64,000 nucleotides of DNA, from positions 124,001-188,000 of the IMG/VR virus record IMGVR_UViG_3300035703_000010. One strand, written 5' to 3'. The notes below the pieces were generated by a model. It had not been told where the DNA came from and did not search any database. It was given only the letters and a program-made list of their open reading frames with translations. A program made the position numbers and the translations under genes. Position 1 is the first letter of the stretch. Every line of letters begins with the position of its first letter. Positions 14,926 to 42,131 of the stretch are shown here, in pieces.

Positions 14926-15585
14926 ATGCCATCGCAACCAAACAAAGTAGAATTAATTGGTTTTTATGGGTCAGATGAATCGCATGCACTTTCAGCATGG
15001 ACTTCAACATCAAGAGACCTGACTGAAGACAAAAAAGACAGAATTCCAAAGTTGCTTAAAATGTTAGCAGAAAATGGACATGAAACTCCCTTTGAAAAGA
15101 GTTCACTCCACTTTCTAGTAACGACAGATATCGCTTCTCATATTCATCTACTTAAGCATCGAATTGGTGTTTCTATCAACGCTGAATCAGCACGTTACAA
15201 GGAACTTAAGGAAGACAAATACTACGTTCCAGTCGATTGGGATCTTGAAGAGCGCGAAGCTTACATTGAGCATCTAGAGTCAAGCTTGCAAAAGTATCAT
15301 TCAACTCTGGAAAGACTTGTCCAAAAAGGAATGAGTCGTAAACGTGCTAAGGAATCAGCTAGGCTCTATCTTCCGTATGGAAATCAGATCACTGCAGATG
15401 TAATGTTCAATTTTCGCAGTTTCGTTCATTTCATTAGGTTACGATATTCAGAACATGCTCAATTAGAGATTAAAGACATTGCAAAGCAAATGTTGGAATT
15501 GGTTCAAGAGACTGAATCATTTTCAGCAACAATGGATGCATTCGGATTAACTGTCGATGGGAAAGTTAGAGGTCCATTTACATGA
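14926..15585 (+). CDS. thyX: Flavin-dependent thymidylate synthase
   Basis: GHETPFE, KHRIGVSINAESARY (RHR..S...S.RY variant), ARLYLP, NFRSF, HAQLEI. Confidence 0.9.
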   Translation: MPSQPNKVELIGFYGSDESHALSAWTSTSRDLTEDKKDRIPKLLKMLAENGHETPFEKSSLHFLVTTDIASHIHLLKHRIGVSINAESARYKELKEDKYYVPVDWDLEEREAYIEHLESSLQKYHSTLERLVQKGMSRKRAKESARLYLPYGNQITADVMFNFRSFVHFIRLRYSEHAQLEIKDIAKQMLELVQETESFSATMDAFGLTVDGKVRGPFT

Positions 15586-16178
15586 GCAAAATTATTGTCA
15601 TAGAAGGGCCTGATCGTTGCGGAAAAGCAACACAAGCAAAGCTTTTAAGAGAACGTTTAGCTAGTTTTGGAATAATGTCAACGATAGTTGAAGTTCCAGT
15701 AAGGTCTGCTGTAACGTATAGGATCATTTACTGGATGCTACAAAACGGCCTGGCCAAAAAATTTCCAAAATTATTCCAGGTATTACAGTTCTTAAATAGA
15801 AAGATTTTTCAATTATTAGACCTGCCTGGTCTAGAGAAGCAATATGACGCTATCATTTTTGATAGATGGAGTTTATCGACAATTGTTTATGGTGGTGCTT
15901 CAGGAGTGTCGCAAGATTTTACTGTTAAACTTTCAAAACATCTTAGACAACCAGATCATACGTTTATTTTATTAGGTATGTCTTTTCCTCATGAAGCAGA
16001 AGATGTTTACGAGGCTGATAAAAACTTGCAAGAAGACGTAAGAATTCGATATTCTTTATGGGCTGCTAATCATCCAAATGATACGACAATGATTAACTGT
16101 CAACAAAATAAGAAGAAAATATCAGTTCAAATTTATGAAGTTTTGAAATCAAAAAAGATCATTGACAGCTATAGATGA
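15582..16178 (+). CDS. tmk: Thymidylate kinase
   Basis: IEGPDRCGKATQ P-loop and IIFDRWSLS. Confidence 0.85.
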   Translation: MSKIIVIEGPDRCGKATQAKLLRERLASFGIMSTIVEVPVRSAVTYRIIYWMLQNGLAKKFPKLFQVLQFLNRKIFQLLDLPGLEKQYDAIIFDRWSLSTIVYGGASGVSQDFTVKLSKHLRQPDHTFILLGMSFPHEAEDVYEADKNLQEDVRIRYSLWAANHPNDTTMINCQQNKKKISVQIYEVLKSKKIIDSYR

Positions 16179-16488: not shown

Positions 16489-16569
16489 ATGACGTTTTCT
16501 TTGGCGTCAGTAGCTGTTATTTTTTCCCTAATAGTTGTTTTTAAATTTTTTATCTCTGAGGATGATTGA
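16489..16569 (+). CDS. Possible 26-aa single-TM peptide (not in ORF track)
   Basis: MTFSLASVAVIFSLIVVFKFFISEDD*. Fills the gap exactly, and its TGA overlaps the next ATG (TGATG). Confidence 0.35.
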   Translation: MTFSLASVAVIFSLIVVFKFFISEDD

Positions 16570-16934
16570 TGGATAAGCTTCAAGAAATGTGGAATCAACA
16601 AGAAAAATTTATGGAATTGCTTCAATCACGAAGAGGATTTCCTGAATTTCCACTTGACATGAAATCAAAAACCGGTCAAAAGTTCCTCAAAGGAATTACT
16701 CATGAATGTATGCATGAGTTATTTGAAGCTAATCTTCTTTTGAAAAACTCAAAAGACCATAGAGCTACTGACGTAAAAGAATTTAATCGTGAAGATTACA
16801 TTGAAGAACTTGTCGATGCTCTTCACTACTTTTTTGAAATTGCAATTTGTAGTGGTGTTACTATGGATGAACTTCATGAAGCATACATGAAGAAAGGTAG
16901 AATTAACATCAATAGAATTGAAAATGGATATTAA
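16569..16934 (+). CDS. All-alpha (dimeric dUTPase / T4 gp56 dCTPase-like) dNTP pyrophosphatase
   Basis: HELFEA...EELVDALHYF...NINRIENGY pattern of the all-alpha NTP-PPase superfamily. Confidence 0.7.
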   Translation: MDKLQEMWNQQEKFMELLQSRRGFPEFPLDMKSKTGQKFLKGITHECMHELFEANLLLKNSKDHRATDVKEFNREDYIEELVDALHYFFEIAICSGVTMDELHEAYMKKGRININRIENGY

Positions 16935-26311: not shown

Positions 26312-29005
26312 ATGACTACAAAAGTTCCTTCACGATTCGTAGGCCTTCACAGCCACTCGGGGTTTAGTACCTTTGATGGACTTGATTATCCGCAAGAACA
26401 CATCGATTACGTTCTAGAGAACGGTATGGATGCCTGGTCGTTGACTGACCATGGTCACATGAACGGATTCTGCCATGCATATCTTCATGCCGAGAAGATG
26501 AAAAAATCAGGTAAGAACTTCAAGTTCATTCCTGGCTGCGAGATGTACGTCCATCCTGATCTAAAACAATGGCAGATCGATCTCGATAAGTCGAGAGAAA
26601 AACCGATCAAGGACGAATCTATCCTCACACCCCTCGCTGCGATCGTTGACGGTAACGATGAAACGACTGACATCGGTACCGATGAAGCCGCATTGACCAT
26701 CGAAAACGAGGAGGAAACAAAATCAGGCAAGTACAACGACCCGATCAAACGTCGGCATCATCTCGTTGTCCTACCGAAAACATCAATTGGCCTACAAAGG
26801 TTATTCCATCTAGTTTCTCGAGGTTATTTGGAGGGCTTCTATAGGTTCCCACGAGTTGATTATGCGATGTTGAAGGAAGCCGCAAAGGGAGGTCATCTCA
26901 TGATTTCAACAGCATGCCTAGGTGGTGTGCTGAGCTATGACGTCTTCTCAAAGGTTCAACGCGTCAAGTTCGATGACCTATCACACAAACTTCTTGATGA
27001 TAGGAGCTTGCTTGAGTCAACCTTGCTTGAGATGGGTAACACATATGACAAATTGGTTAATGCTGTAGGACGAGACAATGTTTGCCTTGAGCTACAATTC
27101 AACAAACTTCCAGCCCAACATCTTGTTAACCGCGCAATTCTTGAATTTGCGAAGAAGAATTCATTGACTGATCGACTCGTTGTAACTTGCGATTCTCATT
27201 ATTCTCGTCCAGACAACTGGAAAGAGCGTGAGATCTACAAGAAGCTAGGATGGCTTAATTACCAAAACTTCGATCCGAACATGCTGCCGAAGTCGAAGGA
27301 CGATCTGAAGTGCGAGTTGTATCCAAAGAACGCACCTCAGGTCTGGGATTCCTACCTGTCCACGTCTGAAGACATGTCATTCTATGATGATGATGTTGTT
27401 CGTGAAGCAATCGAGCGGACTCATGACATCGTCCACAATGAAATCGGCGATATCCATCCTGATAAGGAGATGAAGCTACCATCCTACGTCATCCCTGAAG
27501 GATTCACTGAAGATAAAGCATTGGTCGATGCATGTAAGAAAGGTCTCATTTGGCGAGGGCTCGATGACAAGCCTGAGTACATCGAACGTATCAAGTATGA
27601 GCTATCGATCATCAAAGGTAAGAAGTTCTCACGCTACTTCTTGACGATGAAGGCGATCATGGATTTGGCACGAGAACATATGTTGATCGGGCCAGGTCGC
27701 GGATCTGCTGCAGGTTCTCTCGTTGCTTATGTTCTTGGTGTTACTAACCTTGACCCTATTGAATACGACTTATCATTTGAACGCTTCCTTAACCCATCTC
27801 GACAAGGCGCTCCTGATATCGATTCTGACATTGGAGATCGCGATAAACTAATCGAGCTCATGCGCGAAAACTTTGGTAATAACAATGTTATCCCAATTTC
27901 TAACTACAATACTTTTAAGTTAAAGAGCCTCATTAAAGACATCGCGCGGTTCTACAACATCCCATTTGAAGAAGTCAATGCAGCCTTAGCTCCCGTTGAA
28001 GATGACGTAAAGAAAGAGGTCTTTAAGCCAGGAGTTGATAAGAATCTTTTCGTCTTGACTTATGAAGATGCGATGAAGTATTCAAAGTCGATGCAAGACT
28101 TCGTCGCAGCGCATCCAGAGGTTGCAGAACCTATCGAGATCTTATTCAAACAAAACCGATCTCTCGGCCGACATGCGGGTGGCGTCATCGTGTCGGAGAA
28201 CGTTGCAGAGAGGATGCCTCTTATTCTTGCTCGTGGCGAACCTCAAACCCCATGGGTCGAAGGTATGCACTATAAACACCTAGAAGAGTTCGGCTGGATC
28301 AAATTCGATCTACTAGGTCTTGAAACCCTGCGCATTATCGAACGAGCTATCTACCTGATTCTGCAACGTCGAGAAGGTGTAGCAAATCCAACATTTAAGG
28401 ATGTGAAGGCTTGGTTCGACAAGCATATGGATCCTAAGAATATCGATCTCAATGATCAAAGGGTGTATGAATACGTTTATCATGAGGGACGATTTGCTGG
28501 TGTGTTCCAGTGTACGCAACCTGGTGCTCAACGATTGTTCACTAAGGCAAAGCCTCGCAGCATCATCGACATTGCAACTTTGACATCGATCTATCGTCCT
28601 GGTCCTCTAGCGGCCAATGTCGATAAGATCTATATCGGCGCCAAGAACGAACCTGATAAGATCGATTACCAGCACCCTTTGATCAAGAAGGTGCTTGAGT
28701 CTACATACGGATGTTTACATGGATCAACTGTTATTACAACTGATATTGGAGATATTACGATTGAAAAAATCGTAGAAGATCAGTTAGTCGGAACAAAATT
28801 GCCATCTTTTAACGAAGAATCTTGCGAGATTGAACAAGACGAAATTGTTGCTGCAGTTTGCACTGGCGTTCAAGAGACTCTAACGATTGAACTTGAAGAT
28901 GGAAAAACTATTCGTTTAACATCAGATCATAGAGTGTACACAACTAGAGGCTGGGTCGAGGCTGGAGATTTGACTGCAGAAGACGAAATTTTTGGAATTG
29001 AATAG
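26312..29005 (+). CDS. dnaE: DNA polymerase III alpha, N-terminal part, fused to the N-half of a split intein
   Basis: PHP domain (HSHS, TDHG, GCE, DSHY), GPGRGSAAGS, catalytic PDIDSD, KFDLLGL, RPGP. Ends STYG|CLHGST (IntN from residue 801). Confidence 0.95.
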   Translation: MTTKVPSRFVGLHSHSGFSTFDGLDYPQEHIDYVLENGMDAWSLTDHGHMNGFCHAYLHAEKMKKSGKNFKFIPGCEMYVHPDLKQWQIDLDKSREKPIKDESILTPLAAIVDGNDETTDIGTDEAALTIENEEETKSGKYNDPIKRRHHLVVLPKTSIGLQRLFHLVSRGYLEGFYRFPRVDYAMLKEAAKGGHLMISTACLGGVLSYDVFSKVQRVKFDDLSHKLLDDRSLLESTLLEMGNTYDKLVNAVGRDNVCLELQFNKLPAQHLVNRAILEFAKKNSLTDRLVVTCDSHYSRPDNWKEREIYKKLGWLNYQNFDPNMLPKSKDDLKCELYPKNAPQVWDSYLSTSEDMSFYDDDVVREAIERTHDIVHNEIGDIHPDKEMKLPSYVIPEGFTEDKALVDACKKGLIWRGLDDKPEYIERIKYELSIIKGKKFSRYFLTMKAIMDLAREHMLIGPGRGSAAGSLVAYVLGVTNLDPIEYDLSFERFLNPSRQGAPDIDSDIGDRDKLIELMRENFGNNNVIPISNYNTFKLKSLIKDIARFYNIPFEEVNAALAPVEDDVKKEVFKPGVDKNLFVLTYEDAMKYSKSMQDFVAAHPEVAEPIEILFKQNRSLGRHAGGVIVSENVAERMPLILARGEPQTPWVEGMHYKHLEEFGWIKFDLLGLETLRIIERAIYLILQRREGVANPTFKDVKAWFDKHMDPKNIDLNDQRVYEYVYHEGRFAGVFQCTQPGAQRLFTKAKPRSIIDIATLTSIYRPGPLAANVDKIYIGAKNEPDKIDYQHPLIKKVLESTYGCLHGSTVITTDIGDITIEKIVEDQLVGTKLPSFNEESCEIEQDEIVAAVCTGVQETLTIELEDGKTIRLTSDHRVYTTRGWVEAGDLTAEDEIFGIE
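28712..29005 (+). mobile_element. Split intein N-part (IntN, 97 aa)
   Basis: Starts with Cys1 (CLHGSTVI), has block B IRLTSDHRVYTTRGW, then a TAG stop with no block F/G. Confidence 0.93.
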
Positions 29006-29048
29006 ACATATGGGTATATTTATCTTCCAAGAAAGAGGCTCTTGGAAG

Positions 29049-29954
29049 ATGAGAACTTGTGAATGTTGTGATAAAAAATTTGTTTATACAGGACCAAAAG
29101 GAAAAAATTATCCCGCAAAGACTTGCAGCGCAGAATGTTATAAGATATTAAGATCAAAAAAAATATCTCAATCAAACATCGATAGAAGGATACACGAAAA
29201 AGTAGAAAAGATTTGCGAAATTTGTGGTACGATAATCATAACAAATGATACAGAGAACCAACGCATAACTTGCTCTAAGAAATGTCATTCTAAGAGATTA
29301 TCGAAATTATACGCAGGAAGAAAAATAACTGAAGAGTGGCGACAAAATCAGAATAAGTCAAAGACTAAAGACAAAATTGTAAAGCATGGAGATTTTTCAT
29401 GTGATAAATGTCAAAAACATTTTGATACCAACACTTCGCTTAGATCTCATAGATCATATTGTACTCCTGGAAATGAAGGTCATATTTGTTGCGAAATATG
29501 CAATAAGAGTTTTTCTACGCGAGGGTACAAGATCCATTTTAAGAGTCATGATTTAATATGGAGATCGAAGACTACAAGTTCTCTTCAAAAATCTCTACTA
29601 ACAAGAACGAAATGTCAGACTACCTCTAAATCAGAGTTAGAATTTTTTGAAAAATTAAAGTCTTTGTTGGGTGATGATGTTGTACACAAGTTTAAAATTG
29701 AAGGAATTACTCATGAATATGATTTTTTTGTTCCTTCAAAAAATGTTATCATAGAGTTTGATGGTGATTATTGGCATGGCAATAAGAAGCTATACGAGTT
29801 ATCTTCTAGAATGAAACGTCAATATCAGATTGATAAAGTGTGGAATGAAAAAGCAATAGCTGCTGGGTATAGAATAATAAGAGTTTGGGCATCAGAGTCA
29901 AAAGATTTTAAGTTGGAAAATTATGTTAACACCCTTGAAAATAAAGTCGATTAA
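29049..29954 (+). mobile_element. Free-standing Vsr/DUF559-like homing endonuclease with N-terminal zinc fingers, lying between the intein halves
   Basis: C-terminal SKSELEF...YDFFVPSKNVIIEFDGDYWHG. N-terminal CxxC..CS..C motifs and C2H2-like fingers. ATG at 29049 after RBS AGAGG. Confidence 0.85.
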
Positions 29955-31206
29955 ACGTGACGTACCTGCAAAAGTTTATGATATTCAAACCAAGAAAAAT
30001 CATAACTTCATTGCAAATGGCTTCTTAGTTCATAATTGCATAATTTTTCAAGAGCAAACTATGAAGTTATGTTCTGTCGTTGCTGGGTTCCCGGAGGCTG
30101 AAACTGACACGATTCGTAGAAACATCATGAAGCGTTCTGCGTCTAAAAAGGATGCAGCTGCTGCAGACGCGAAGAAGGCAAAAGAAGACTTCGTCGCCGG
30201 AGCGATGAAGAACGGTGTGCCTGAAAAGGTGGCTGATGAACTATACGAGAAGATTCTCTTCTTCTCTGGCTACGGCTTTAACGCTTCTCACGCAGTGTCT
30301 TACGCAATTGATTCATATTACTGTGCCTGGCTTCTCACCTACTTTGAGGAGGAATGGCTATGCGCTTACCTCGAGTCGATGTCAGGAAATGATGAAAAGC
30401 GTGCTAAGGCATTCTCTGAAGTCAAGGCATTAGGTTACAAGATCGTCAACATCGACATCAACTATGCAACGAAGAGCTGGACGATCCTGGATGGTAAACG
30501 ATTCATGCCTAGCTTCCTTTCATGTAAGGGTGTAGGGGAATCCGCAGTAGAAGAAATCATGGAAAATCGTCCGTATAAATCAGTGGAAGATATGTTATGG
30601 AATGAGGATGGGTCATGGAGGCATTCCAAGTTCAATAAACGTGCCTTGGAGGCCCTCATTGCAATTAAGGCATTTGATTCTCTTGATTGTATCGGTCATG
30701 ATAGGACTTTCACCGGATACAAACACATGAGTGAGATCTTGATCAACAGAAACGGCGATATCAAGAAACATACAAAGAAGAATCCGACTGCAGGAATCGA
30801 AGCATTCCGTGAAGCTTTGATCGATACGAAGAACATGGATGAATGGTCCAGATCAGAATTGGTAGATAACAGCATAAAGTATCTCGGTTCATTCAACGCT
30901 GCGATGCTGATGCCAGAAGAGATCTTACAAAAGCTTGAGAGCAGAGGAGTCAAGTCTGTTGATGATTTATCTGAAAGCGACATCTATTGGTTTATCGTTT
31001 CTGATACAAAGCCTAAGAAAACGAAGACAGGAAAAAACTATTTGTTGTTAACGATTACTGGGCTTGGAGGACAAAACCATAGGTTGTTCTGTTGGGGATG
31101 GAATGGCGAAACAGAAATTCCCAAGTACAGCGTTTGCCTTTCAGAAATCACCGTAGATGGCTACGGTAATAAAACTTTCATGAGTAAGATTAAAGTCCTT
31201 GATTGA
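29923..31206 (+). CDS. dnaE: Split intein C-part (38 aa, 29923-30036) fused to the DnaE C-terminal part
   Basis: MLTPLKIKSIK...VYDIQTKKNHNFIANGFLVHN|CIIFQEQ, then DnaE motifs YGFNASHAVSY and HhH KGVGESAV. Confidence 0.95.
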   Translation: MLTPLKIKSIKRDVPAKVYDIQTKKNHNFIANGFLVHNCIIFQEQTMKLCSVVAGFPEAETDTIRRNIMKRSASKKDAAAADAKKAKEDFVAGAMKNGVPEKVADELYEKILFFSGYGFNASHAVSYAIDSYYCAWLLTYFEEEWLCAYLESMSGNDEKRAKAFSEVKALGYKIVNIDINYATKSWTILDGKRFMPSFLSCKGVGESAVEEIMENRPYKSVEDMLWNEDGSWRHSKFNKRALEALIAIKAFDSLDCIGHDRTFTGYKHMSEILINRNGDIKKHTKKNPTAGIEAFREALIDTKNMDEWSRSELVDNSIKYLGSFNAAMLMPEEILQKLESRGVKSVDDLSESDIYWFIVSDTKPKKTKTGKNYLLLTITGLGGQNHRLFCWGWNGETEIPKYSVCLSEITVDGYGNKTFMSKIKVLD

Positions 31207-31217
31207 AGAGGTATAAT

Positions 31218-31739
31218 ATGGGAATGGTTATTTTATTTGACGGGCCTGACAAGGTCGGTAAAACTGAAATGGTCAAAGAACTTTCTAAAAGGCTAAACGT
31301 TCCTTCGTTTAAGAATGAATCTGAATGGAAAGCTTTTTCTGATGATCCTGATTATTTCGTTAACGCTTTAAGATACGGTGATCCATACTTTTATAATTTT
31401 CTAAAATCTACAGGGACATCAGTCATTCTAGATAGATCATATCCTTCAGAATGGGTGTACTCTAAAGTTTACGGAAGAAAGACTGATCAAGAAGCGTTGA
31501 GGCATATCGACTCTTTGGCTGCATCGTTTGGAGTAAAGATTATTGTTCCATATCGTACTTCTTACGATGGATTGCATGATGATATGCATGACATAGATTC
31601 TGAACAAATGAAAAAGATTTCAGACGTTTATATCGAGTTTATTGAATGGACGAAGTGTAATGTCCTACGTCTGTGTGTAGATTCAGAAGACCTTGATTGG
31701 GAAATGAAAACCATTCTAAAATTTATTGGGAAAAATTGA
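31218..31739 (+). CDS. Second deoxynucleoside-monophosphate kinase (thymidylate-kinase-like)
   Basis: P-loop FDGPDKVGKT and ILDRSYPSEWVY. Confidence 0.8.
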   Translation: MGMVILFDGPDKVGKTEMVKELSKRLNVPSFKNESEWKAFSDDPDYFVNALRYGDPYFYNFLKSTGTSVILDRSYPSEWVYSKVYGRKTDQEALRHIDSLAASFGVKIIVPYRTSYDGLHDDMHDIDSEQMKKISDVYIEFIEWTKCNVLRLCVDSEDLDWEMKTILKFIGKN

Positions 31740-31743
31740 TATT

Positions 31744-32769
31744 ATGAAACTAGGAATCAGTTATTGGGGATTTTGTGAGCCATTTGAAGCATCTAAAGAG
31801 GCAAAGACTCCTGATGGTCATCGTTACGGTCGGCCTATCATGGTAGATGCCTTACTTAATCAAGGGCATGAAGTGTATGCGCTGCAGGAAAGAAGAGAAT
31901 CTACTCCATATCCTGGAATCACATATGACATGGGATTTCCTGATATTGACGTTCTATTTGTAGAATGGCGTTGGAAGACATACAAGAATTCTGGACCAAA
32001 CAAGTTTGAAAAAGATTTGGACAGACAGTTTGAACTATTGACTCATTATCATGGAAAGATTCCTGTCGTTATTTGGGATTGTGATTATAAAGTCACACAC
32101 TTAGATGAAATGATGTGGCCTGAAGCGATTATCGCAGATCCAGCTTTTGAGCCCAGGTATCTTACAAGAAAACGAGAAAGAATAATGTTCTGGACGGATT
32201 GGAAAAAGCTTCTTCCAGCTGTTTCTACATCATTTGAATATGGGTATGTAGGAAATAACTATGAGCGTCCTCAAGCTTTTGAAAAGTATTATTCTTTTCC
32301 GTCGTCGACTCTTCGCAATTATGGAATTCAAACGACAGTTCATGGAAATTGGTTGGAAGTTTCACCAGAAAGAGAATCTCCGAAAGTATTGATTTCTTCT
32401 CACCCTAGTATTTCATTTGCTCAAAGATTGAATTTCTATGAATCGATGAAGAGATTAAACTCATTTATTTGTACGACACATATTACAAAACCAGAATATG
32501 CTCAAAGAGGTTTTGCTTCTCCTAGATATGTTGAGAATATCGTTTCGAACGTGCCAGCTTTGGTTCCAAAAGAATTTTTGAAGTCGAATCTATTAGGGAA
32601 AGACTGGGCAGTTGAAGGTGGAGATTCTGTCATTGAAAAAGTCAAATTAATTTTTTCAATGAATTTAGAAGAAAGAAATTCGTTAATTTTAGAACAGGAA
32701 AATAATTTAAAATCTAGCGGTGTATTTTCAGTAAGTAATGTTGTAGATTTTCTTGAGTCGGTTAAGTGA
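31744..32769 (+). CDS. GT-B glycosyltransferase, T4 beta-glucosyltransferase-like
   Basis: The C-terminal half YGYVGNNYER...TTVHGNW...KPEYAQRGFASPRYVENIVSNVPALVPKEF resembles, from memory, T4 BGT IYGG..R...EFFGN...KNYNDNFITLRVWETMASDAVMLIDEEF. Confidence 0.65.
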   Translation: MKLGISYWGFCEPFEASKEAKTPDGHRYGRPIMVDALLNQGHEVYALQERRESTPYPGITYDMGFPDIDVLFVEWRWKTYKNSGPNKFEKDLDRQFELLTHYHGKIPVVIWDCDYKVTHLDEMMWPEAIIADPAFEPRYLTRKRERIMFWTDWKKLLPAVSTSFEYGYVGNNYERPQAFEKYYSFPSSTLRNYGIQTTVHGNWLEVSPERESPKVLISSHPSISFAQRLNFYESMKRLNSFICTTHITKPEYAQRGFASPRYVENIVSNVPALVPKEFLKSNLLGKDWAVEGGDSVIEKVKLIFSMNLEERNSLILEQENNLKSSGVFSVSNVVDFLESVK

Positions 32770-32776
32770 GGAAAAA

Positions 32777-33772
32777 ATGAAAGTATTAATTACAGGTATT
32801 GCTGGTCTTCTTGGTGCAAACTTTTCTCGTTATTTGCTTGATAAAGGCTATAAAGTAGTTGGAATCGATGATTTAAGCGGCGGGTATGAAGATTCAGTAC
32901 CAAAGGATGCTACTTTTTATAAGCTTGACTTGACCGACCAAAAGAAGGTTGACGAGATTTTTAACGCAGAAAAGCCTGATTACGTTTTTCATTTTGCAGC
33001 ATATGCAGCTGAAGGTCTTAGTCCATTCATAAGAAATTACAATTACACAAATAATGTATTAGCTTCAACCAATGTAATCAACGCTTGCGTAAATCATGAT
33101 GTAAAGAAAATCATCTTTACGTCGTCAATGGCTGTTTATGGAGTAGGAAATCCTCCATTTACCGAAGAGCAACTACCAACGCCTGAAGATCCATATGGTA
33201 TTGCAAAATATGCAGTTGAAATGGATCTGAAGTTGGCTCATGAAATGTTTGGTCTTCGATACAGCATTGTTCGACCGCACAATGTAGTTGGAATCTACCA
33301 GAACATTTGGGATCGTTATCGCAACGTAATTGGAATTTGGATTCGAAAAGCAATGAATGGCGAACCACTTTCGATTTTTGGAGATGGTACACAAGTTCGA
33401 GCATTTTCAGACATTAAGTTTTATTTGGAACCATTTGAAAAATTAATGGATTCTTACGATGGAGAAATCTTCAACATCGGTGCTGACAAACATTACACAA
33501 TTAATGAAGCTGCAGACACAGTAATCGGCGTTGCAAAAGAGCTAGGAATTAACGCAACTAAAGTTCATCTAGAAAAGAGGAATGAAGTTCATACAGCATA
33601 TTGTGATCATACTAAGGCTCATAAGCTCTTGTCTTTTGAGGACAAAACAGATTTGCGAGAAACCGTTATGAAGATGTTTAAGTGGGCCATGGAACAGCCA
33701 AATCGTCCTACAAAGAGCATGAACTATGAAATTGAAAAGAACATGTATTCTTTTTGGAAGAACACAAAATGA
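32777..33772 (+). CDS. NAD-dependent NDP-sugar epimerase/dehydratase
   Basis: ITGIAGLLG, FTSSMAVYG, catalytic YGIAK, GDGTQVRAF. Confidence 0.92.
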   Translation: MKVLITGIAGLLGANFSRYLLDKGYKVVGIDDLSGGYEDSVPKDATFYKLDLTDQKKVDEIFNAEKPDYVFHFAAYAAEGLSPFIRNYNYTNNVLASTNVINACVNHDVKKIIFTSSMAVYGVGNPPFTEEQLPTPEDPYGIAKYAVEMDLKLAHEMFGLRYSIVRPHNVVGIYQNIWDRYRNVIGIWIRKAMNGEPLSIFGDGTQVRAFSDIKFYLEPFEKLMDSYDGEIFNIGADKHYTINEAADTVIGVAKELGINATKVHLEKRNEVHTAYCDHTKAHKLLSFEDKTDLRETVMKMFKWAMEQPNRPTKSMNYEIEKNMYSFWKNTK

Positions 33773-34548
33773 TCACGAATTTATCTTTTCCTGAAAATTT
33801 AAAAGATAGAGAGAAATTTATTTTTGATCAAGTTTTGTTAGGAAACTTTGATGCTTCATGGGTTCCTTTAACCTATGATATTTCTGGTAAAAAAGTTATT
33901 TTGAACGTTATGTCAGACGCGCTAAAAGTTGGAGGAATTAGAGTAAACGTCTCTGCGTTCCTCCAACAACAGCTAGCAGATGTTTTTGATGCTTCTTTGT
34001 TAACTGCGTTAGTTGCAGATTTGATGTACGTTCACGCGTCGAATATCCTAAATCCAGTTCCACAACCGATATCATCAACAGTGTCTTCTATGATATCTCA
34101 TGATGATAAAGTGACTAAACAATTGAAGTCTTATAATGGCGGAATAGTTTCTACAGTGGGAAAACATTGGATTTTAGATAAAAAAATAGATCAGCAACCT
34201 AGTAAAGCTTGCAATTATGGATGGCATTTTACAGGATCTAATTTTCAAGGAATTAATGGATTTCCTTCTACAACATTACAAAAAACGTTAGATGGTAAAC
34301 CAATCAAAGTGATTCAGCCGAATGCTACTGCTCATGATGCAAAGCATTCTGATTATTCACAAATTTGTCAATTGGTTTCTCAACAATGTTGGATTAATGG
34401 AGTAGAACATAGATTTTCTGATCTATTGCAAGATTCTTCATTGTGTAATTTGGTCAACCACAATGGTACATTAAAAAATACTAGACAACCTGGAGTTCAA
34501 AAGATTTCTGGCCAAGTTGTGTTATTTCCAACAACAATTTCACCTTGA
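33769..34548 (+). CDS. Hypothetical protein
   Basis: 259-aa ORF coupled (ATGA overlap) to the epimerase. Conserved-looking VGKHW, NYGWH and HSDYSQ motifs. Confidence 0.6.
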   Translation: MITNLSFPENLKDREKFIFDQVLLGNFDASWVPLTYDISGKKVILNVMSDALKVGGIRVNVSAFLQQQLADVFDASLLTALVADLMYVHASNILNPVPQPISSTVSSMISHDDKVTKQLKSYNGGIVSTVGKHWILDKKIDQQPSKACNYGWHFTGSNFQGINGFPSTTLQKTLDGKPIKVIQPNATAHDAKHSDYSQICQLVSQQCWINGVEHRFSDLLQDSSLCNLVNHNGTLKNTRQPGVQKISGQVVLFPTTISP

Positions 34549-34555
34549 GGATATT

Positions 34556-34753
34556 ATGCCAACTTATGAATATCAATGCGAATCTTGTTCATTTTTTATG
34601 GAAAAAGTTCAATCAATAAAGGATGATCCTCTATCTGATTGTCCTCATTGTAATAAAAACTGCTTAAAACGCTTGATTTCAGTAGGAGGAGGATTTACTT
34701 TAAAGGGTGGAGGTTGGTACAAGGATCTTTATTCTTCTACTCCTTCGAAGTAG
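34556..34753 (+). CDS. FmdB-family zinc-ribbon protein
   Basis: MPTYEYQCESC...CPHC...LKRLIS..GFTLKGGGWY. Confidence 0.9.
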   Translation: MPTYEYQCESCSFFMEKVQSIKDDPLSDCPHCNKNCLKRLISVGGGFTLKGGGWYKDLYSSTPSK

Positions 34754-35456
34754 ATCCCAACTTTTTTACGATGTTTCTGCTTGTTCTAGCAGCAGGATGA
34801 GATGGTTTAATTAAATTATGTTCGTCTTCATCAATTTTTGACTCAAATTTAGGTTTGATTTCTCCTGTCTCACAATTCAATATTATGTTGTATCCACCTT
34901 TTCCAAGCTTTAAAGGCTCAGTTAATGTGGATAGATAATCATATCTTCCTGCATTTATCATTTCTTTGTCAAACCATTGTTCTAGAACGAAATTAGAAAC
35001 GCTGACATTAGTACCATTGACATTAATTTCATATGAATTGCTTTCAACAGGATCACATAATTCAACAGCTACAAATGTTTCGTCTCCTCTATGCGACCAT
35101 AAATTGATATAAGGATTATAAAAAGTTTCAAGTATTTCATGAGAAAGAACTACGGAGACGGATTTTGATCCAGATAATACCGTTCCTCCATTGTCTAAAA
35201 CAGGATTAACAAAAACTCTACCCCAAACTTTTCCATCTGGGTCTTGTGTGTGGTATCCTAATGCGCTAGCATGATCTGAATCATCCATTATCACCATTGG
35301 AAATCCATCGTTGCCTTCTATTTTTATTTCCCATGGTAGTCTTCCTAAAATAGGACATGCATGATCTCTAAGTTGAATTCTGCACGCCTCGACCATAAGT
35401 TCGACATCTTGAGGAGATATTCTGTTTGATTTGTTTATGACGTTGAAAGTTTTCAT
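34737..35456 (-). CDS. Putative zinc metallopeptidase-like protein
   Basis: ALGYH...SHEILE...ELCDPVE metal-binding pattern. Confidence 0.55.
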   Translation of the reverse strand: MKTFNVINKSNRISPQDVELMVEACRIQLRDHACPILGRLPWEIKIEGNDGFPMVIMDDSDHASALGYHTQDPDGKVWGRVFVNPVLDNGGTVLSGSKSVSVVLSHEILETFYNPYINLWSHRGDETFVAVELCDPVESNSYEINVNGTNVSVSNFVLEQWFDKEMINAGRYDYLSTLTEPLKLGKGGYNIILNCETGEIKPKFESKIDEDEHNLIKPSHPAARTSRNIVKKLGSTSKE

Positions 35457-35514
35457 AGATATTCATAATTAACAATGAACTTTTAAAATAAAAAAGCGTA
35501 ATATAGGAAATGTT

Positions 35515-36483
35515 ATGAAAACCAAGAAAGCACTATTAACAGGCGCAGCTGGATTTATTGGAAGCAACTTGGCAAAAGAACTTTTGTCTAAAGGCGTAGA
35601 CTTAGATGTTGTTGATGATCTTTCAAGCGGTCATGTAGAGTTTTTACCTCAGCAGCTTCAAGAAACGTTAATAAAAGAGGATTTTTCATCACAAAATGTT
35701 TTAGATTTGATTAAAAACAAAAAATATGATGCTGTTTTTCACATTGCAGCAATTCCTCGAGTCAGCTATTCTGTAGATTTTCCAGTACAAACAAATGACA
35801 ATAACGTATCTAAGACCCTGTCATTAATTGATGCTTGTAGAGGTAATGTAGGAAGATTTGTTTTTGCTTCTTCATCATCAGTGTACGGCGATACGAATAT
35901 TTTACCAACTCCTGTTACATGTGAAAAAAATCCTAAATCTCCATATGCATTACAAAAATCTATCATAGAAGATTATTTGAAAATTTATTACAATTTGTAT
36001 GGATTGGACTCTGCTTGCTTAAGGTTTTTTAACGTATTCGGTCCTCATCAGCTTGGAAATTCTCCGTATTCTACTGCTTTAGGGGCTTGGTTGACTGCAA
36101 TCCATTCTGGAAATCAAATGCGATCTGATGGAGACGGATCACAATCCAGAGATTTATGTTATGTTGATAACGTTGTTGACGTTTGTATAAGAGCAGCAGA
36201 GTCCCAACAAGAATTAAAAGCCGTTAAATTAAACGTAGCTTGCGGAGTAAGAACTACGAATAAAGAAATTCTTTCTTACCTTTTATCCAAATATCCAAAT
36301 GCAAAATATTATGATGCACCATGGAGACCAGGTGACGTAATGCATACATTAGCTGATATTTCTATGACAAAGGAAGTTTTAGGTTATGAGCCTTTAGTCC
36401 TTCCTTGGGAAGGGATTGATAAAACCATTAAATGGTATGATGAAAATTGGGATATGATTAAAACTCTAGGTCTTTCAAAATGA
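35515..36483 (+). CDS. Second NAD-dependent NDP-sugar epimerase (GalE/WbpP-like)
   Basis: TGAAGFIGS, FASSSSVYG, YALQK, LRFFNVFGP, GDGSQSRD. Confidence 0.92.
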   Translation: MKTKKALLTGAAGFIGSNLAKELLSKGVDLDVVDDLSSGHVEFLPQQLQETLIKEDFSSQNVLDLIKNKKYDAVFHIAAIPRVSYSVDFPVQTNDNNVSKTLSLIDACRGNVGRFVFASSSSVYGDTNILPTPVTCEKNPKSPYALQKSIIEDYLKIYYNLYGLDSACLRFFNVFGPHQLGNSPYSTALGAWLTAIHSGNQMRSDGDGSQSRDLCYVDNVVDVCIRAAESQQELKAVKLNVACGVRTTNKEILSYLLSKYPNAKYYDAPWRPGDVMHTLADISMTKEVLGYEPLVLPWEGIDKTIKWYDENWDMIKTLGLSK

Positions 36484-37481
36484 AAGTTTACGAGAATTTC
36501 ACTGAAGCTTACGTCGACATTGTCAAAGATGTCTATACAGAGCCTGAATTCATTTCGTCTCCTCGCGGAATGAAGATCAAGGAGATCTTGGGATACCAAT
36601 TCAAGATCCTTAATCCTCGAAACAGAATTCCTTATGTTCCTGGAAGAGAGCTGTCGATCCACTACATGATCGCAGAGCTTCTTTGGTATTTGAGCGGAAA
36701 TGATTCAACGGATTGGATCTCGAACTATTCTGCTTTCTGGTCAAAGATCTCAGATGACGGCAAGACGGCCAACAGCGCTTATGGCGCTCGTATTTTCAAG
36801 CCTCATGATAGAATCGCAGCTAAGGTAAAACAGGACTGGACCCAATGGAATTATGTCGTAAATGAACTAAAGTCCGACCCTGATTCTCGCCGTGCCGTTG
36901 TTCATATCAGGTCTCCGCAGGATTCCATTCTTGCTAGCCTTGATGTGCCGTGTACTTTATCTCTTCAATTCTTTTTGAGGAATGACAAGGTTCACATGGT
37001 AACATCCATGAGATCATCCGATGTTATCCTTGGTTTAGCTTATGATGTTCCAGCATTTACTATCTTCCAAGAACTTTTGGCTCTTCAACTTACTCTAGAG
37101 CTAGGTCGTCCTATTGGTCTTGGGACATACACTCATTTAAGCGCTTCTCTTCATTTGTACGAGAGGCATTTTAAAATGGCAGAAAAAATACTTGAGGAAG
37201 ATAAGAAGCAGGATTATAGAAATGTTTTAGAGATGCCTCCTATGCCTTCTATGCCTCCGCTTGATGATCTGATGGTAGCGGAACGTGAGATTAAAAAGTG
37301 TATGACGGTTCCTGTTCTTTCAAGGGCGATTAATAACATCAACTTGAAAAGTGATTATTGGAACGATTGGTGTAGAGTTTTAGCATCTCATAAAGCTATT
37401 AAACTAAACGATGAACAAGCTTGTAACGAATTACTTTCTAATACAAAATTTGAAGGATACAGGTATTTCATAAAATCATGA
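36480..37481 (+). CDS. Thymidylate-synthase-fold enzyme, probably dCMP hydroxymethylase (T4 gp42-like)
   Basis: AELLWYLSG, AYGARI, DPDSRRAV, catalytic PC158T, MRSSD. Residue 189 is Asp where ThyA has the dUMP-specifying Asn. Confidence 0.8.
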   Translation: MKVYENFTEAYVDIVKDVYTEPEFISSPRGMKIKEILGYQFKILNPRNRIPYVPGRELSIHYMIAELLWYLSGNDSTDWISNYSAFWSKISDDGKTANSAYGARIFKPHDRIAAKVKQDWTQWNYVVNELKSDPDSRRAVVHIRSPQDSILASLDVPCTLSLQFFLRNDKVHMVTSMRSSDVILGLAYDVPAFTIFQELLALQLTLELGRPIGLGTYTHLSASLHLYERHFKMAEKILEEDKKQDYRNVLEMPPMPSMPPLDDLMVAEREIKKCMTVPVLSRAINNINLKSDYWNDWCRVLASHKAIKLNDEQACNELLSNTKFEGYRYFIKS

Positions 37482-38056
37482 CTACGACATTTACTGTATT
37501 TTGTGGACCCATGTTTTCTGCTAAGACCACATCTTTGTTGTCTGTTTTAGACAGGTTTAAATATCAAGGTAAGAAGATTGCAGTTTTTAAACCCATGCTA
37601 GATGATCGATACAGTGTAGATAACATATCAACTCATGGAGGATGGAAAATTCCTGCAACTTGCGTAAAATTAGGAACCGATATTCTTGAGCATCTTGCAA
37701 ATATGGATGAAAATCCTAATGTAATTGCAGTAGATGAAGCTTTTATGATTCCTGGAGTTGCCGATGTTCTTATTTGGTTGTATCGAAGCGGTTATTCTAT
37801 CGTTGTTTCCAGTTTAGACTTGTCAGCAACTGGAAAGTCATTTAATGAAATCGAAAAAATGCTTCCTTGGGCAACTAAGGTCGAAAAACTAAGCGCAGTT
37901 TGTACAGTATGTAATAAAGATGCTTTTTACACATATAAAAAGCAAACAGGCGGAGATGAGATTGAAGTAGGAGGCGTTGAATTGTATGAGCCTAGATGTT
38001 CTAGATGCCATCCTATAATTCTAAATCAAGATAGAAATTATGCCATGAAGGATTGA
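37478..38056 (+). CDS. tdk: Thymidine kinase
   Basis: GPMFSAKT, FKPMLDDRY, IAVDEA, KLSAVCTVC, YEPRCSRC. Confidence 0.9.
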   Translation: MTTTFTVFCGPMFSAKTTSLLSVLDRFKYQGKKIAVFKPMLDDRYSVDNISTHGGWKIPATCVKLGTDILEHLANMDENPNVIAVDEAFMIPGVADVLIWLYRSGYSIVVSSLDLSATGKSFNEIEKMLPWATKVEKLSAVCTVCNKDAFYTYKKQTGGDEIEVGGVELYEPRCSRCHPIILNQDRNYAMKD

Positions 38057-38059
38057 TTT

Positions 38060-38539
38060 ATGTCAAATTCTTTAGAACGTAGTATTCAAAAATTGAGCGT
38101 TTTCATGAAAATGTGCAATGAATTGTCTACGCTGTCATATGATGACAAATATAAAGTTGCTTCTATAATAATAACGAAGGATTATAGAGAAGTTTGTGCT
38201 ATAGGATATAATGGAGGATACAAAGGCGGTCCTAATAAAAGATCATCTTTAGAACAAGGAAAATCAGGGTTTTTGCATGCTGAAGAGAATGCATTGTTCC
38301 ATTTATGCAAACCTTATGAACTTAGAGGTGATCTTTTGATGCTATGCACTCATAAACCATGTTCAATGTGCGCAAGAAGAATTGTCAATAGTGGGATTAA
38401 GAACATTATCTATTATTCTGATTATATTGATGCAGAAGCCGCTTCCGATGATATTTTTAAGGTTACTGGAACTTCTTGTGTTAAATTTGATCAACTTTTG
38501 CAGAATCCAGCTATTATCCTGAATATTCTAGAGTCCTGA
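38060..38539 (+). CDS. dCMP deaminase family protein
   Basis: AIGYNG, HAEENAL, PCSMCA. Confidence 0.88.
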   Translation: MSNSLERSIQKLSVFMKMCNELSTLSYDDKYKVASIIITKDYREVCAIGYNGGYKGGPNKRSSLEQGKSGFLHAEENALFHLCKPYELRGDLLMLCTHKPCSMCARRIVNSGIKNIIYYSDYIDAEAASDDIFKVTGTSCVKFDQLLQNPAIILNILES

Positions 38540-38567
38540 TCGATAATTACTTAGAAGCGGAGTTGTT

Positions 38568-38933
38568 ATGAAGCATAAGCTTACAGAAAATTACATTATC
38601 AATATTATGAGAGAAGAATGGCAAAAAAAAATTAATTCTTTAATCTCAGAATCAAAGAAAGAAAAGCCGCGTGGTCTTCGCATGCAGGTTGATGTTGACG
38701 GCGACGGAAATAAAGAAAACGTTATAGACGTTGGATTACGAGTTCAAAAAAAGAAGCCTGACGATAAAAGGATCAATGTAAAAAGTGATCCTTCCATGGG
38801 TTTAGTATATACGGTTGTTTCAGTAAATGAACGAGATGGTACAATAACGTTAGGACGTCCAGGATCAGGAGACGGAGATAAAACAATAGTTATAACTAAA
38901 CAAGCTTTTGAAAGCGAATACGAAAGAAAGTGA
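38568..38933 (+). CDS. Hypothetical protein with 'KLTENYIINIMREE' N-terminus
   Basis: Preceded by ATAATTACTTA at 38543. Confidence 0.6.
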   Translation: MKHKLTENYIINIMREEWQKKINSLISESKKEKPRGLRMQVDVDGDGNKENVIDVGLRVQKKKPDDKRINVKSDPSMGLVYTVVSVNERDGTITLGRPGSGDGDKTIVITKQAFESEYERK

Positions 38934-38943
38934 TAATAACATC

Positions 38944-40226: not shown

Positions 40227-40525
40227 TTCGTACTGATATTCTTTACGATAAAAAGTGCATTCATGTTAAGTTAACGAAAAATACTCATTTAAAATTAAGA
40301 GAAAAATTATTTCAGTATCAACTTTCAATGCAATCAGTTTTTGATGAATTTGCAAGACTGATAATAGAAGATGATAAAGTTGCAATTAAAGTATTAGAAG
40401 ATCTTTGCTTAAGACGAGCAAAATTAGAACTTGAAAAACCTATAAAAAAGACAACTTCATATAATAGAGATCGCATTAATGAACTAGATCATAATACGTT
40501 GTATAATATGATCAACGATGACTGA
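40223..40525 (+). CDS. Hypothetical protein
   Basis: Overlapping-start ORF in the operon. Confidence 0.55.
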   Translation: MIRTDILYDKKCIHVKLTKNTHLKLREKLFQYQLSMQSVFDEFARLIIEDDKVAIKVLEDLCLRRAKLELEKPIKKTTSYNRDRINELDHNTLYNMINDD

Positions 40526-41779: not shown

Positions 41780-41789
41780 ATGAAATAGA

Positions 41790-42110: not shown

Positions 42111-42131
42111 TAATACTTATCGACATTCGAC

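What the first reader, a model, noticed from the sequence alone, without database searches (positions are those of the whole stretch)
31744..33772. BGT-like glycosyltransferase translationally linked to an NDP-sugar epimerase
Kinase, GT and epimerase are packed 4-7 nt apart. The GT C-terminal domain follows the T4 beta-glucosyltransferase pattern as I recall it (Y.G..R ... T/F.GN ... K.Y....+.PR..E.+.S....L+..EF), but its N-terminal acceptor domain (WGFCE...DGHRYGR...EWRW) is quite different. That may reflect a different sugar or acceptor.
Basis: partly seen in the sequence, partly recalled or inferred. Interest (0 to 1): 0.65.

Follow-up and report, generated by a model that had tools for sequence, protein, structure and literature searches.

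The report
Marine phage DNA sugar-tagging gene module
An uncultured large marine phage carries an unannotated glycosyltransferase, a distant relative of the phage T4 enzyme that puts glucose on modified cytosine in DNA, locked in a conserved gene module with a cytosine hydroxymethylase, a nucleotide kinase and sugar-nucleotide epimerases, so it most likely decorates the phage's own DNA with a sugar other than glucose.

Summary
The glycosyltransferase (GT) is at 31744-32769 and the SDR epimerase at 32777-33772. A P-loop kinase ends 4 nt upstream of the GT, and the epimerase starts 7 nt after it.

The GT matches no Pfam, PHROG or NCBIfam model. A confident model (pLDDT 94) has the GT-B fold. T4 beta-glucosyltransferase (BGT) is the best solved match (Z 23.3), but GT4 enzymes score almost as well (Z 21-22).

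A profile comparison links the whole C-terminal domain to the BGT family (89%, E 2e-6). The N-terminal domain shows no significant similarity. It is therefore a separate, virus-only family, not a BGT member.

Context is the strongest evidence. In 34 distinct related viral loci, across at least 10 gene orders, the GT stays beside the same kinase and a ThyA homologue. That homologue carries the dCMP-hydroxymethylase signature of T4 gp42. An epimerase is usually present, and often a UDP-galactopyranose mutase.

The phage has a separate ThyX, a Tmk and a candidate dCTPase. The cultured Lactobacillus phage ATCCB has the same module with a true BGT relative in the GT position.

Best reading: a 5-hydroxymethylcytosine DNA glycosyltransferase using a phage-made UDP-sugar, probably galactose-type. 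No biochemistry exists.

The parts
31203..31739 (+). P-loop nucleotide kinase, about 173-178 aa. The ORF opens at TTG 31203, but the homology to RB69 gp45 starts at the ATG at 31218. Proposed role: kinase for the modified dCMP.
   Evidence: It matches phrog_761 at 1.6e-13 and has weak Tmk/AAA Pfam hits. BLASTP gives 1e-8 to the RB69 gp45 'nucleotide kinase' and 3e-11 to phage ATCCB_0044. It lies within 1.75 kb of the GT in 33 of 34 distinct related loci. A separate true Tmk exists at 15582-16178.
31744..32769 (+). GT-B glycosyltransferase, 341 aa. It founds an unannotated virus-only family. Proposed role: 5-hydroxymethylcytosine DNA glycosyltransferase.
   Evidence: It has no Pfam, PHROG or NCBIfam hit. 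At least 220 homologues were found, all unnamed. The AF2 model has pLDDT 94.4. VIA-align puts T4 BGT on top at Z 23.3. HHalign to the BGT family gives 89%. The context is conserved.
32777..33772 (+). SDR NDP-sugar 4-epimerase 1, 331 aa.
   Evidence: It matches PF01370 at 1e-50. Its best PDB match is 4zrm, Thermotoga UDP-glucose 4-epimerase, at 1.7e-45. The S-Y-K triad is kept, there is no dehydratase D-E pair, and Ala sits at the E. coli GalE Y299 position.
33769..34548 (+). 259-aa ORF of unknown function. Its start overlaps the epimerase stop (ATGA). It is present only in the window's close clade.
   Evidence: No family hit was found. The Atlas search returned only hypothetical viral and Bacteroidota clusters. 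It is conserved at 58-76% identity in L012-L021.
34737..35456 (-). 239-aa ORF of unknown function on the opposite strand. It is present only in the window's close clade.
   Evidence: No family hit was found. It is conserved in L012-L021.
35515..36483 (+). SDR NDP-sugar 4-epimerase 2, 322 aa. This is the epimerase type kept in nearly all related modules.
   Evidence: It matches PF01370 at 8e-50. Its best PDB matches are 6dnt at 1.6e-55 and the UDP-GlcNAc 4-epimerases WbgU and WbpP at 1e-47 to 1e-43. The S-Y-K triad is kept, and Thr sits at the GalE Y299 position.
36480..37481 (+). ThyA homologue, 333 aa. Predicted role: dCMP 5-hydroxymethylase.
   Evidence: Its best PDB match is MilA CMP hydroxymethylase at 4e-45, against 1e-19 for true thymidylate synthases. 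Its signature at ThyA positions L143/C146/D169/N177 is D-C-D-D, as in T4 gp42, whereas the RB69 5hoC synthase is E-C-N-D. The rule comes from PMC13326640.
37478..38539 (+). Thymidine kinase (37478-38056) and dCMP deaminase (38060-38539).
   Evidence: They match PF00265 at 1.7e-38 and PF00383 at 1.2e-16.
14926..16178 (+). ThyX (14926-15585) and a true thymidylate kinase (15582-16178). Together they cover dTMP and dTDP synthesis, which leaves the ThyA homologue and the 178-aa kinase free for another job.
   Evidence: They match PF02511 at 7.7e-36 and PF02223 at 1.7e-15 (57.7 bits against a 27-bit cut-off).
16566..16934 (+). All-alpha nucleotide pyrophosphohydrolase, 122 aa. It is a candidate dCTPase, the counterpart of T4 gp56.
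   Evidence: It matches PF08761 at 24.6 bits, over the cut-off, weakly matches PF12643, and matches phrog_12184 at 1.3e-13. Its substrate was not tested.

Best explanation
The window holds a pre-replicative cytosine-hypermodification module of the T-even type, built from different parts.

Proposed pathway. Every step is inferred; none has been measured.
1. The all-alpha NTP pyrophosphohydrolase (16566-16934) and the dCMP pool supply dCMP.
2. The ThyA homologue (36480-37481) converts dCMP to 5-hydroxymethyl-dCMP.
3. The small P-loop kinase (31203-31739) phosphorylates this nucleotide. Host enzymes take it to the triphosphate, and the phage DnaE-type replicase incorporates it into DNA.
4. After replication, the GT-B enzyme (31744-32769) transfers a sugar from a UDP-sugar onto the hydroxymethyl group of cytosine in DNA. 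It binds UDP with a BGT-like C-terminal domain (R261, E264, Y252). It probably uses an invariant Asp after strand beta-4 (D112 or D114) as general base, as BGT uses D100. That would invert the anomeric configuration.
5. The two 4-epimerases (32777-33772 and 35515-36483) make the donor from host UDP-Glc or UDP-GlcNAc. The donor is most likely UDP-Gal and/or UDP-GalNAc. Related phages add a UDP-galactopyranose mutase (furanose donor) or a UXS-like decarboxylase, so the sugar probably differs between lineages.

The likely benefit is protection of phage DNA from host nucleases.
For: Fold and remote homology:
- The GT has the GT-B fold, with T4 BGT as top solved neighbour (Z 23.3, 303 residues, rmsd 3.6; Z 21.9 in the search that did not rely on Foldseek).
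- HHalign to the BGT family gives 89% and E 2.3e-6 over the whole C-domain, with invariant residues on invariant residues.
- Controls give nothing: 0.5% against the RB69 gp46:47 DNA-GT family and 2.4% against the phage's own Glycos_transf_1 enzyme.

Acceptor:
- The ThyA homologue is closest to MilA cytosine hydroxymethylase.
- It has the D-C-D-D signature of T4 gp42 in the window and in all 43 related loci that carry it. The rule is from PMC13326640.
- The phage has its own ThyX and Tmk, so the ThyA homologue and the 178-aa kinase are not needed for thymidylate.
- Locus L028 pairs this GT family with a T4-type gp42-like enzyme instead.

Linkage:
- Of 34 distinct loci, 32 have the ThyA homologue within 3.7 kb. 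The other two are cut by a contig end.
- In 33 of the 34, the kinase lies within 1.75 kb.
- This holds across at least 10 gene orders.

Parallels:
- Kinase-GT-ThyA-homologue triads occur in RB69, DLP3 and RL38J1, where DNA glycosylation has been shown chemically (PMC13326640). The window kinase is homologous to RB69 gp45.
- The cultured phage ATCCB has a kinase, a D-C-D-D ThyA homologue, a true BGT-family GT and a UDP-Galp mutase in a row.

Donor:
- Both SDRs keep the S-Y-K triad and lack the dehydratase pair. Both have a small residue at the GalE Y299 gate.
- A UDP-Galp mutase sits beside the GT in two separate GT clades.

Distribution: no relative was found in 185,579 prokaryote genomes.
Against: - There is no biochemical or DNA-chemistry evidence for any step.
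- Fold search cannot separate BGT from GT4 enzymes that act on lipids or small molecules (PimA Z 21.8, BshA Z 21.5). The nearest ESM Atlas shapes are bacterial CgeB-like PF13524 enzymes.
- The BGT Pfam model does not match, and the N-terminal acceptor domain has no significant similarity to BGT.
- BGT R191 has no aligned Arg, and R175 lies one column away from BGT R195.
- The D169 rule separating hydroxymethylase from hydroxylase rests on one paper's test set.
- The kinase's substrate is unknown even in RB69, which also has a separate gp1-type dNMP kinase.
- The genome has at least five other GT1-family enzymes at 29-43 kb that could also consume the epimerase products.
- Net charge of the family is not basic, though the same is true of BGT relatives.
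Confidence: 0.68

Rival explanations
1. The GT glycosylates a non-DNA acceptor, such as a virion protein, a host envelope glycan or a small molecule. In this reading the epimerases feed that pathway, and the position among nucleotide-metabolism genes is incidental.
For: Structural scores to GT4 and CgeB-like enzymes of glycan and small-molecule pathways are as high as to BGT. The phage has a large separate glycosyltransferase cluster. No sequence model of a DNA GT matches.
Against: The GT keeps the ThyA homologue and the kinase as neighbours through at least 10 rearrangements in 34 distinct loci. Incidental placement does not explain that. The same slot holds a true BGT relative in phage ATCCB. 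The C-domain homology is specific to BGT when set against two GT-B controls.
Confidence: 0.12
2. The module glycosylates a different modified base. One option is 5-hydroxycytosine, as in RB69, DLP3 and RL38J1. The other is 5-hydroxymethyluracil, made directly or through the adjacent deaminase.
For: The 5hoC synthases of RB69 and DLP3 also have MilA as their best structural match. The kinase is homologous to RB69 gp45. RL38J1 joins galactose to 5hoC and encodes a UDP-Galp mutase. A dCMP deaminase lies 0.6 kb downstream.
Against: The residue at ThyA position 169 is Asp in the window and in all 43 related loci. Every tested 5hoC synthase has Asn there. Position 177 is Asp, which marks cytosine specificity, not the Asn of dUMP enzymes. 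The GT shows no detectable relation to the RB69 first arabinosyltransferase family.
Confidence: 0.12
3. The ThyA homologue and the kinase make hmC DNA, but the GT and epimerases act on a nucleotide or nucleotide-sugar intermediate before replication, not on polymer DNA.
For: The GT's direct neighbour is a nucleotide kinase in nearly all loci. The N-terminal acceptor domain is unlike that of BGT.
Against: In every characterised phage cytosine glycosylation system, the sugar is added to DNA after replication (PMC13326640). A polymerase would have to accept a bulky glycosylated dNTP.
Confidence: 0.05

Closest known systems
T4 beta-glucosyltransferase (BGT; Pfam PF09198, CAZy GT63) with gp42 dCMP hydroxymethylase
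   Same: Both are GT-B enzymes of about 340-350 aa. BGT is the best solved structural match. The C-terminal UDP-binding domain is homologous at profile level, with R..E, Tyr and Gly invariants aligned. An invariant Asp follows strand beta-4. Both are linked to a D-C-D-D ThyA homologue.
   Different: PF09198 does not match. The N-terminal domain has no significant sequence similarity. The hydroxymethylase is MilA-like and 333 aa long, not gp42-like. The module carries its own kinase and sugar-nucleotide epimerases, so the donor is probably not UDP-glucose. The host phage has a DnaE-type replicase.
Lactobacillus phage ATCCB genes 0044-0047 (MK504445)
   Same: It has the same four functions side by side: a gp45-like kinase (3e-11), a D-C-D-D ThyA homologue (39% identity), a GT and a UDP-galactopyranose mutase (48% identical to the one in L004).
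   Different: Its GT is a true BGT-family member (PF09198 at 78 bits; HHalign 100% to the BGT profile). As a single sequence it is not detectably related to the window family (0.4%). It has no epimerase in the cluster. Its DNA chemistry is not described in the paper that reports it.
RB69 / DLP3 / RL38J1 glycosyl-5-hydroxycytosine clusters (PMC13326640)
   Same: All have the triad of a Tmk-like nucleotide kinase, a first GT and a ThyA homologue, plus phage-encoded NDP-sugar synthesis genes. RL38J1 uses galactose and a UDP-Galp mutase. The window kinase is homologous to RB69 gp45.
   Different: Those ThyA homologues carry D169N and make 5hoC, whereas this one keeps Asp. The first-GT families are unrelated at profile level. 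Their sugar genes make UDP-arabinose, whereas this module has 4-epimerases.
CgeB-like / Glyco_trans_1_2 (PF13524) bacterial GT-B enzymes
   Same: They are the nearest predicted shapes in the ESM Atlas (TM 0.75-0.77). PF13524 matches 28 of 61 family members, with a best E of 1e-9. BGT relatives also carry it.
   Different: The window protein itself does not reach E 1 against PF13524. The family is virus-only in the collections searched and is tied to nucleotide-modification genes.

Membership tests
T4 BGT family (PF09198 / GT63) | GT-B fold with two Rossmann-like domains, about 350 aa | tested here: met
   The AF2 model has pLDDT 94.4. BGT 1qkj scores Z 23.3 with 303 of 341 residues aligned.
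T4 BGT family (PF09198 / GT63) | Match to the family's sequence model above its cut-off (27 bits) | tested here: not met
   There was no hit at E up to 10 in the genome. None of the 61 family members hit it at E up to 1. The true relative ATCCB_0046 scores 78 bits.
T4 BGT family (PF09198 / GT63) | C-terminal UDP-binding residues (BGT R191, R195, Y261, R269, E272; the roles are from my recollection of the BGT structure papers) | tested here: inconclusive
   HHalign places invariant R261, E264, Y252 and G201 on BGT R269, E272, Y261 and G214. R191 aligns to Gly, and R175 is one column off R195.
T4 BGT family (PF09198 / GT63) | Catalytic Asp100 at the end of strand beta-4 of the N-domain | tested here: inconclusive
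   Invariant D112 and D114 follow the predicted strand 108-111. A non-significant collinear alignment puts D114 on D100. No residue-level structural alignment was available.
T4 BGT family (PF09198 / GT63) | Transfers glucose from UDP-Glc to 5hmC in duplex DNA | not testable with these tools
   This needs an enzyme assay.
T-even-type pre-replicative hmC pathway | ThyA homologue with cytosine specificity (N177D), water access (L143D/E) and Asp169 retained | tested here: met
   The D-C-D-D signature is present in the window and in 43 of 43 related loci, identical to T4 gp42. MilA is the best PDB hit.
T-even-type pre-replicative hmC pathway | Dedicated nucleotide kinase and a dCTP-depleting pyrophosphatase | tested here: inconclusive
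   A second kinase exists besides the true Tmk. An all-alpha NTP pyrophosphohydrolase is present. The substrates of both are unknown.
5-hydroxycytosine glycosylation clusters (RB69 type) | ThyA homologue with D169N | tested here: not met
   Asp occupies this position in all 44 sequences, whereas RB69 gp48 has Asn.
5-hydroxycytosine glycosylation clusters (RB69 type) | First GT homologous to RB69 gp46:47 / DLP3 gp79 | tested here: not met
   HHalign of A1 against A3 gives probability 0.5%.
GT4 / Glycos_transf_1 (PF00534) retaining enzymes | Match to PF00534 and an E-x7-E motif in the donor domain | tested here: not met
   PF00534 matched none of the 61 members. The only E-x7-E strings are at residues 89 and 309, not at the R261/E264 donor site. 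HHalign to the phage's own PF00534 enzyme gives 2.4%.
UDP-hexose 4-epimerases (GalE-like SDR) | S-Y-K triad, no dehydratase Asp-Glu pair, significant match to solved 4-epimerases | tested here: met
   Searches show this. The TIGR01179 scores (145 and 143 bits) are below the equivalog cut-off of 262, so the exact substrate is open.

The most novel reading that the evidence does not exclude
This GT family is a previously unrecognised, abundant class of DNA glycosyltransferases in large marine phages. Together with phage-encoded UDP-sugar 4-epimerases, UDP-galactopyranose mutases and UXS-like decarboxylases, it would attach lineage-specific sugars (galactopyranose, galactofuranose, N-acetylgalactosamine or pentoses) to 5-hydroxymethylcytosine. 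To my knowledge these bases have not been described for the pre-replicative hmC route. If so, ocean viral DNA would carry a diversity of glycosylated cytosines.
Probability: 0.35. Interest if true: 0.75.

Novelty: new variant of a known kind. Interest (0 to 1): 0.6.

Why it matters
Glycosylated hydroxymethylcytosine is the classic phage defence against restriction enzymes and CRISPR. Until recently it was known mainly from T-even coliphages with glucose.

This module suggests the same strategy is widespread in uncultured large marine phages. At least 220 homologues were found, on contigs up to 288 kb. These phages use an unannotated transferase family and their own sugar-nucleotide tailoring enzymes.

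If confirmed, three things would follow. New DNA sugar modifications and new enzymes for labelling 5hmC would become available. It might explain why such phage DNA can be hard to sequence or clone. It would also show that DNA glycosyltransferases swap in and out of a conserved kinase-hydroxymethylase scaffold.

Tried and rejected
- Sequence searches of the GT found nothing useful: Pfam, PHROGs, NCBIfam, PDB by phmmer and by profile and tblastn against 50,697 phage records. The 4a05 cellobiohydrolase hit (E 9e-4) covers a loop-rich N-terminal stretch and does not fit the GT-B model, so I rejected it.
- BLASTP of the GT against T4 BGT is not significant. Only profile-profile comparison detects the link.
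- Global or N-domain-only HHalign to BGT gave nothing.
- Net charge and pI as a hint of DNA binding were uninformative. This family, BGT relatives and the RB69 GT family are all near neutral or acidic.
- The promoter and terminator scan of 25-40 kb gave no more sites than shuffled sequence, so it says nothing about operon structure.
- A MazG (PF03819) search for a dCTPase was negative. The candidate came from PF08761 instead.
- An Atlas search of the 259-aa ORF returned only hypothetical clusters.
- Cluster look-ups gave no names for any homologue.
- I considered that the kinase might be a 5-hmdU-DNA-kinase-like enzyme acting on DNA. Its only detectable phage relatives are gp45-like proteins next to ThyA homologues, so I did not pursue it further.
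- I did not run the large representative-protein search, the read-mapping tools or complex prediction. No claim here rests on them.
Full report
**What is there.**
The window is bases 124001-188000 of a 204,651-bp IMG/VR virus record, estimated about 60% complete. It is a large tailed phage with about 36% G+C. It encodes a DnaE-type polymerase, a DnaB helicase, a UvsX-like recombinase, ribonucleotide reductase and tail fibres.

- A P-loop kinase ends at 31739.
- The glycosyltransferase (GT) runs from the ATG at 31744 to 32769, after a 4-nt gap.
- An SDR epimerase runs from 32777 to 33772, after a 7-nt gap containing a GGA-rich stretch.
- The epimerase stop overlaps the ATG of a 259-aa ORF.

The following genes lie downstream:
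- a zinc-ribbon ORF
- a 239-aa ORF on the opposite strand
- a second epimerase (35515-36483)
- a ThyA homologue (36480-37481)
- thymidine kinase
- dCMP deaminase

**The glycosyltransferase.**
It matches nothing in Pfam, PHROGs or NCBIfam and nothing credible in the PDB by sequence. It also matches nothing in 50,697 phage records.

It has at least 220 homologues in metagenomes, many of them marine. They sit on contigs up to 288 kb, and none has a name. No relative was found in 185,579 prokaryote species genomes.

An AlphaFold2 model built on 61 homologues is confident (pLDDT 94.4, pTM 0.91). It shows two Rossmann-like domains, the GT-B fold.
- Foldseek ranks GT4 enzymes and T4 BGT together.
- VIA-align puts T4 BGT first: 1qkj at Z 23.3, 303 residues, rmsd 3.6.
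- In the search that does not depend on Foldseek, BGT scores Z 21.9. PimA (21.8) and BshA (21.5) are tied with it.
- The nearest ESM Atlas shapes are bacterial CgeB-like PF13524 enzymes.

Fold alone therefore says "GT-B" and cannot name the acceptor.

**Is it BGT-like?**
I built a BGT-family alignment from 31 relatives of the T4 protein and compared the profiles.
- The whole C-terminal domain aligns (window residues 133-327 to BGT 153-337) at 89% probability and E 2.3e-6.
- Family-invariant R261, E264, Y252 and G201 fall on BGT-invariant R269, E272, Y261 and G214.
- Two controls give nothing: the RB69 gp46:47 DNA-arabinosyltransferase family at 0.5% and the phage's own Glycos_transf_1 enzyme at 2.4%.
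- The N-terminal domains do not align significantly (1%). They are collinear, however, and invariant D112 and D114 follow strand beta-4, where BGT has its catalytic D100.
- The BGT Pfam model never matches. PF13524, which BGT relatives also carry, matches 28 of 61 members.

The underlying claim still holds: the donor domain is BGT-like and the acceptor domain is different. The protein is a distinct family, not a BGT member.

**The acceptor: evidence from context.**
The ThyA homologue is far closer to MilA, a cytosine 5-hydroxymethylase (4e-45), than to thymidylate synthases (1e-19).

A 2026 paper (PMC13326640) gives residue rules in E. coli ThyA numbering:
- N177D marks cytosine specificity.
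- L143D/E marks a non-methyl product.
- D169N marks the flavin-dependent 5-hydroxycytosine synthases.

The window enzyme reads D-C-D-D at positions 143/146/169/177. That is identical to T4 gp42, whereas RB69 gp48 reads E-C-N-D.

The phage also has a ThyX and a true Tmk, a dUTPase, and an all-alpha NTP pyrophosphohydrolase that could serve as a dCTPase. The ThyA homologue and the 178-aa kinase are therefore surplus to thymidylate synthesis.

**Conservation of the module.**
I fetched 43 viral loci plus two assembly loci that encode relatives of the GT at 30-82% identity.
- Among 34 distinct loci, a D-C-D-D ThyA homologue lies within 3.7 kb in 32. The other two are cut by the contig end.
- The kinase lies within 1.75 kb in 33 of the 34, and usually within 90 bp.
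- There are at least 10 different gene orders.
- An epimerase of the second type is present in nearly all loci.
- A UDP-galactopyranose mutase lies directly beside the GT in two separate GT clades.
- Some loci add a UXS-like SDR.
- One locus (L028) pairs the GT with a T4-type gp42-like hydroxymethylase instead.

Linkage that survives this much shuffling argues for one pathway.

**Parallels with characterised and cultured phages.**
RB69, DLP3 and RL38J1 carry glycosylated 5-hydroxycytosine, shown chemically. Each has a Tmk-like kinase, a first GT and a ThyA homologue side by side. The window kinase is homologous to RB69 gp45 (1e-8).

The only other cultured-phage relatives of the kinase are in Pectobacterium phage PM2 and Lactobacillus phage ATCCB. 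ATCCB has, in a row:
- the kinase (3e-11)
- a D-C-D-D ThyA homologue (39% identical)
- a true BGT-family GT (PF09198 at 78 bits; HHalign 100%)
- a UDP-galactopyranose mutase

The slot filled by the window's GT is thus filled by a genuine BGT relative in another phage. The paper describing ATCCB does not discuss these genes.

**The donor.**
Both SDRs keep the Ser-Tyr-Lys triad and lack the Asp-Glu pair of 4,6-dehydratases.
- The first is closest to Thermotoga UDP-glucose 4-epimerase.
- The second is closest to the UDP-GlcNAc 4-epimerases 6dnt, WbgU and WbpP.
- At the position of E. coli GalE Y299 they have Ala and Thr. By my recollection of the GalE literature, a bulky residue there excludes N-acetylated substrates. 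If so, both could handle UDP-GlcNAc/GalNAc as well as UDP-Glc/Gal.

Together with the recurrent mutase, this points to galactose-type sugars, but the exact donor is open. No mutase was found in the part of this genome that is held.

**Mechanism and confidence.**
The proposed route is:
- dCMP is converted to hm-dCMP by the ThyA homologue.
- hm-dCMP is phosphorylated to hm-dCDP by the kinase.
- hm-dCDP is taken to hm-dCTP and incorporated into DNA.
- After replication, the GT glycosylates hmC using a phage-made UDP-sugar.

All steps are inferred from homology, residue signatures and gene linkage; none is measured. My confidence that this is an hmC-DNA glycosyltransferase module is about 0.68.

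The rivals are a non-DNA acceptor (0.12), another modified base (0.12) and action on nucleotides rather than DNA (0.05).

The claim of translational coupling rests only on the short gaps. The promoter and terminator scan was at chance level, and the GT-epimerase junction is not conserved.

**Novelty.**
The kind of system is known: phage cytosine hydroxymethylation followed by glycosylation. Three things are new:
- an unannotated, virus-only GT family in the transferase slot
- its coupling to phage-encoded sugar-nucleotide epimerases and mutases
- its spread in large uncultured marine phages

I rate it a new variant of a known kind, with interest 0.6.

Noticed in passing
window 26312-31206: The DnaE polymerase gene is broken inside its finger domain into two ORFs. 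The first carries the N-half of an intein and the second the C-half. A free-standing 320-aa cysteine-rich ORF (28992-29954, no Pfam hit) lies between them. This is a split-intein 'fractured gene' arrangement. Relatives have the polymerase intact at this site, or interrupted at another site.
   Followed up: partly
window 25199-26203: This is a full-length match to the Volactin family of actin-like proteins (PF25216, 1e-66), just upstream of DnaE.
   Followed up: no
genome G000:C1 about 28000-47000 (outside the window): A long minus-strand run of 250-420-aa ORFs includes at least five Glycos_transf_1 glycosyltransferases. It is a separate glycan-building cluster that could also use the epimerase products or extend a DNA glycan.
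   Followed up: partly
L004 5393-7473; L026 7400-9461; L025 3115-4062; L030 9012-9968: Some related modules carry a third SDR with the UDP-glucuronate decarboxylase (UXS) type motif STSE[IV]YG, in two cases next to the UDP-galactopyranose mutase. This hints at pentose or furanose donors in those lineages.
   Followed up: partly
L028 12971-13456: One distant relative of the GT is paired with a short T4 gp42-type hydroxymethylase (216 aa as extracted) instead of the MilA-like 330-aa type. This is a non-orthologous replacement within the same module.
   Followed up: partly
L059 (Lactobacillus phage ATCCB, MK504445 33827-37391): This cultured phage has a kinase, a D-C-D-D ThyA homologue, a BGT-family GT and a UDP-galactopyranose mutase in a row. 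That predicts a galactose-type hmC modification, which its describing paper does not mention.
   Followed up: partly
window 33769-34548 and 34737-35456: Two ORFs of unknown function (259 aa on the plus strand, 239 aa on the minus strand) are inserted between the two epimerases, only in the window's close clade. The first overlaps the epimerase stop by ATGA.
   Followed up: partly
window 38908-39675; 42994-44120: The phage encodes an Fe/Mn superoxide dismutase that is conserved downstream of the module in most relatives. It also encodes a carbon-nitrogen hydrolase followed by a pterin-4a-carbinolamine dehydratase.
   Followed up: no
window 61783-63306: This ORF matches tail-fibre families, some of them annotated as collagen-like. 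The next ORFs, of similar size, were not scanned.
   Followed up: no
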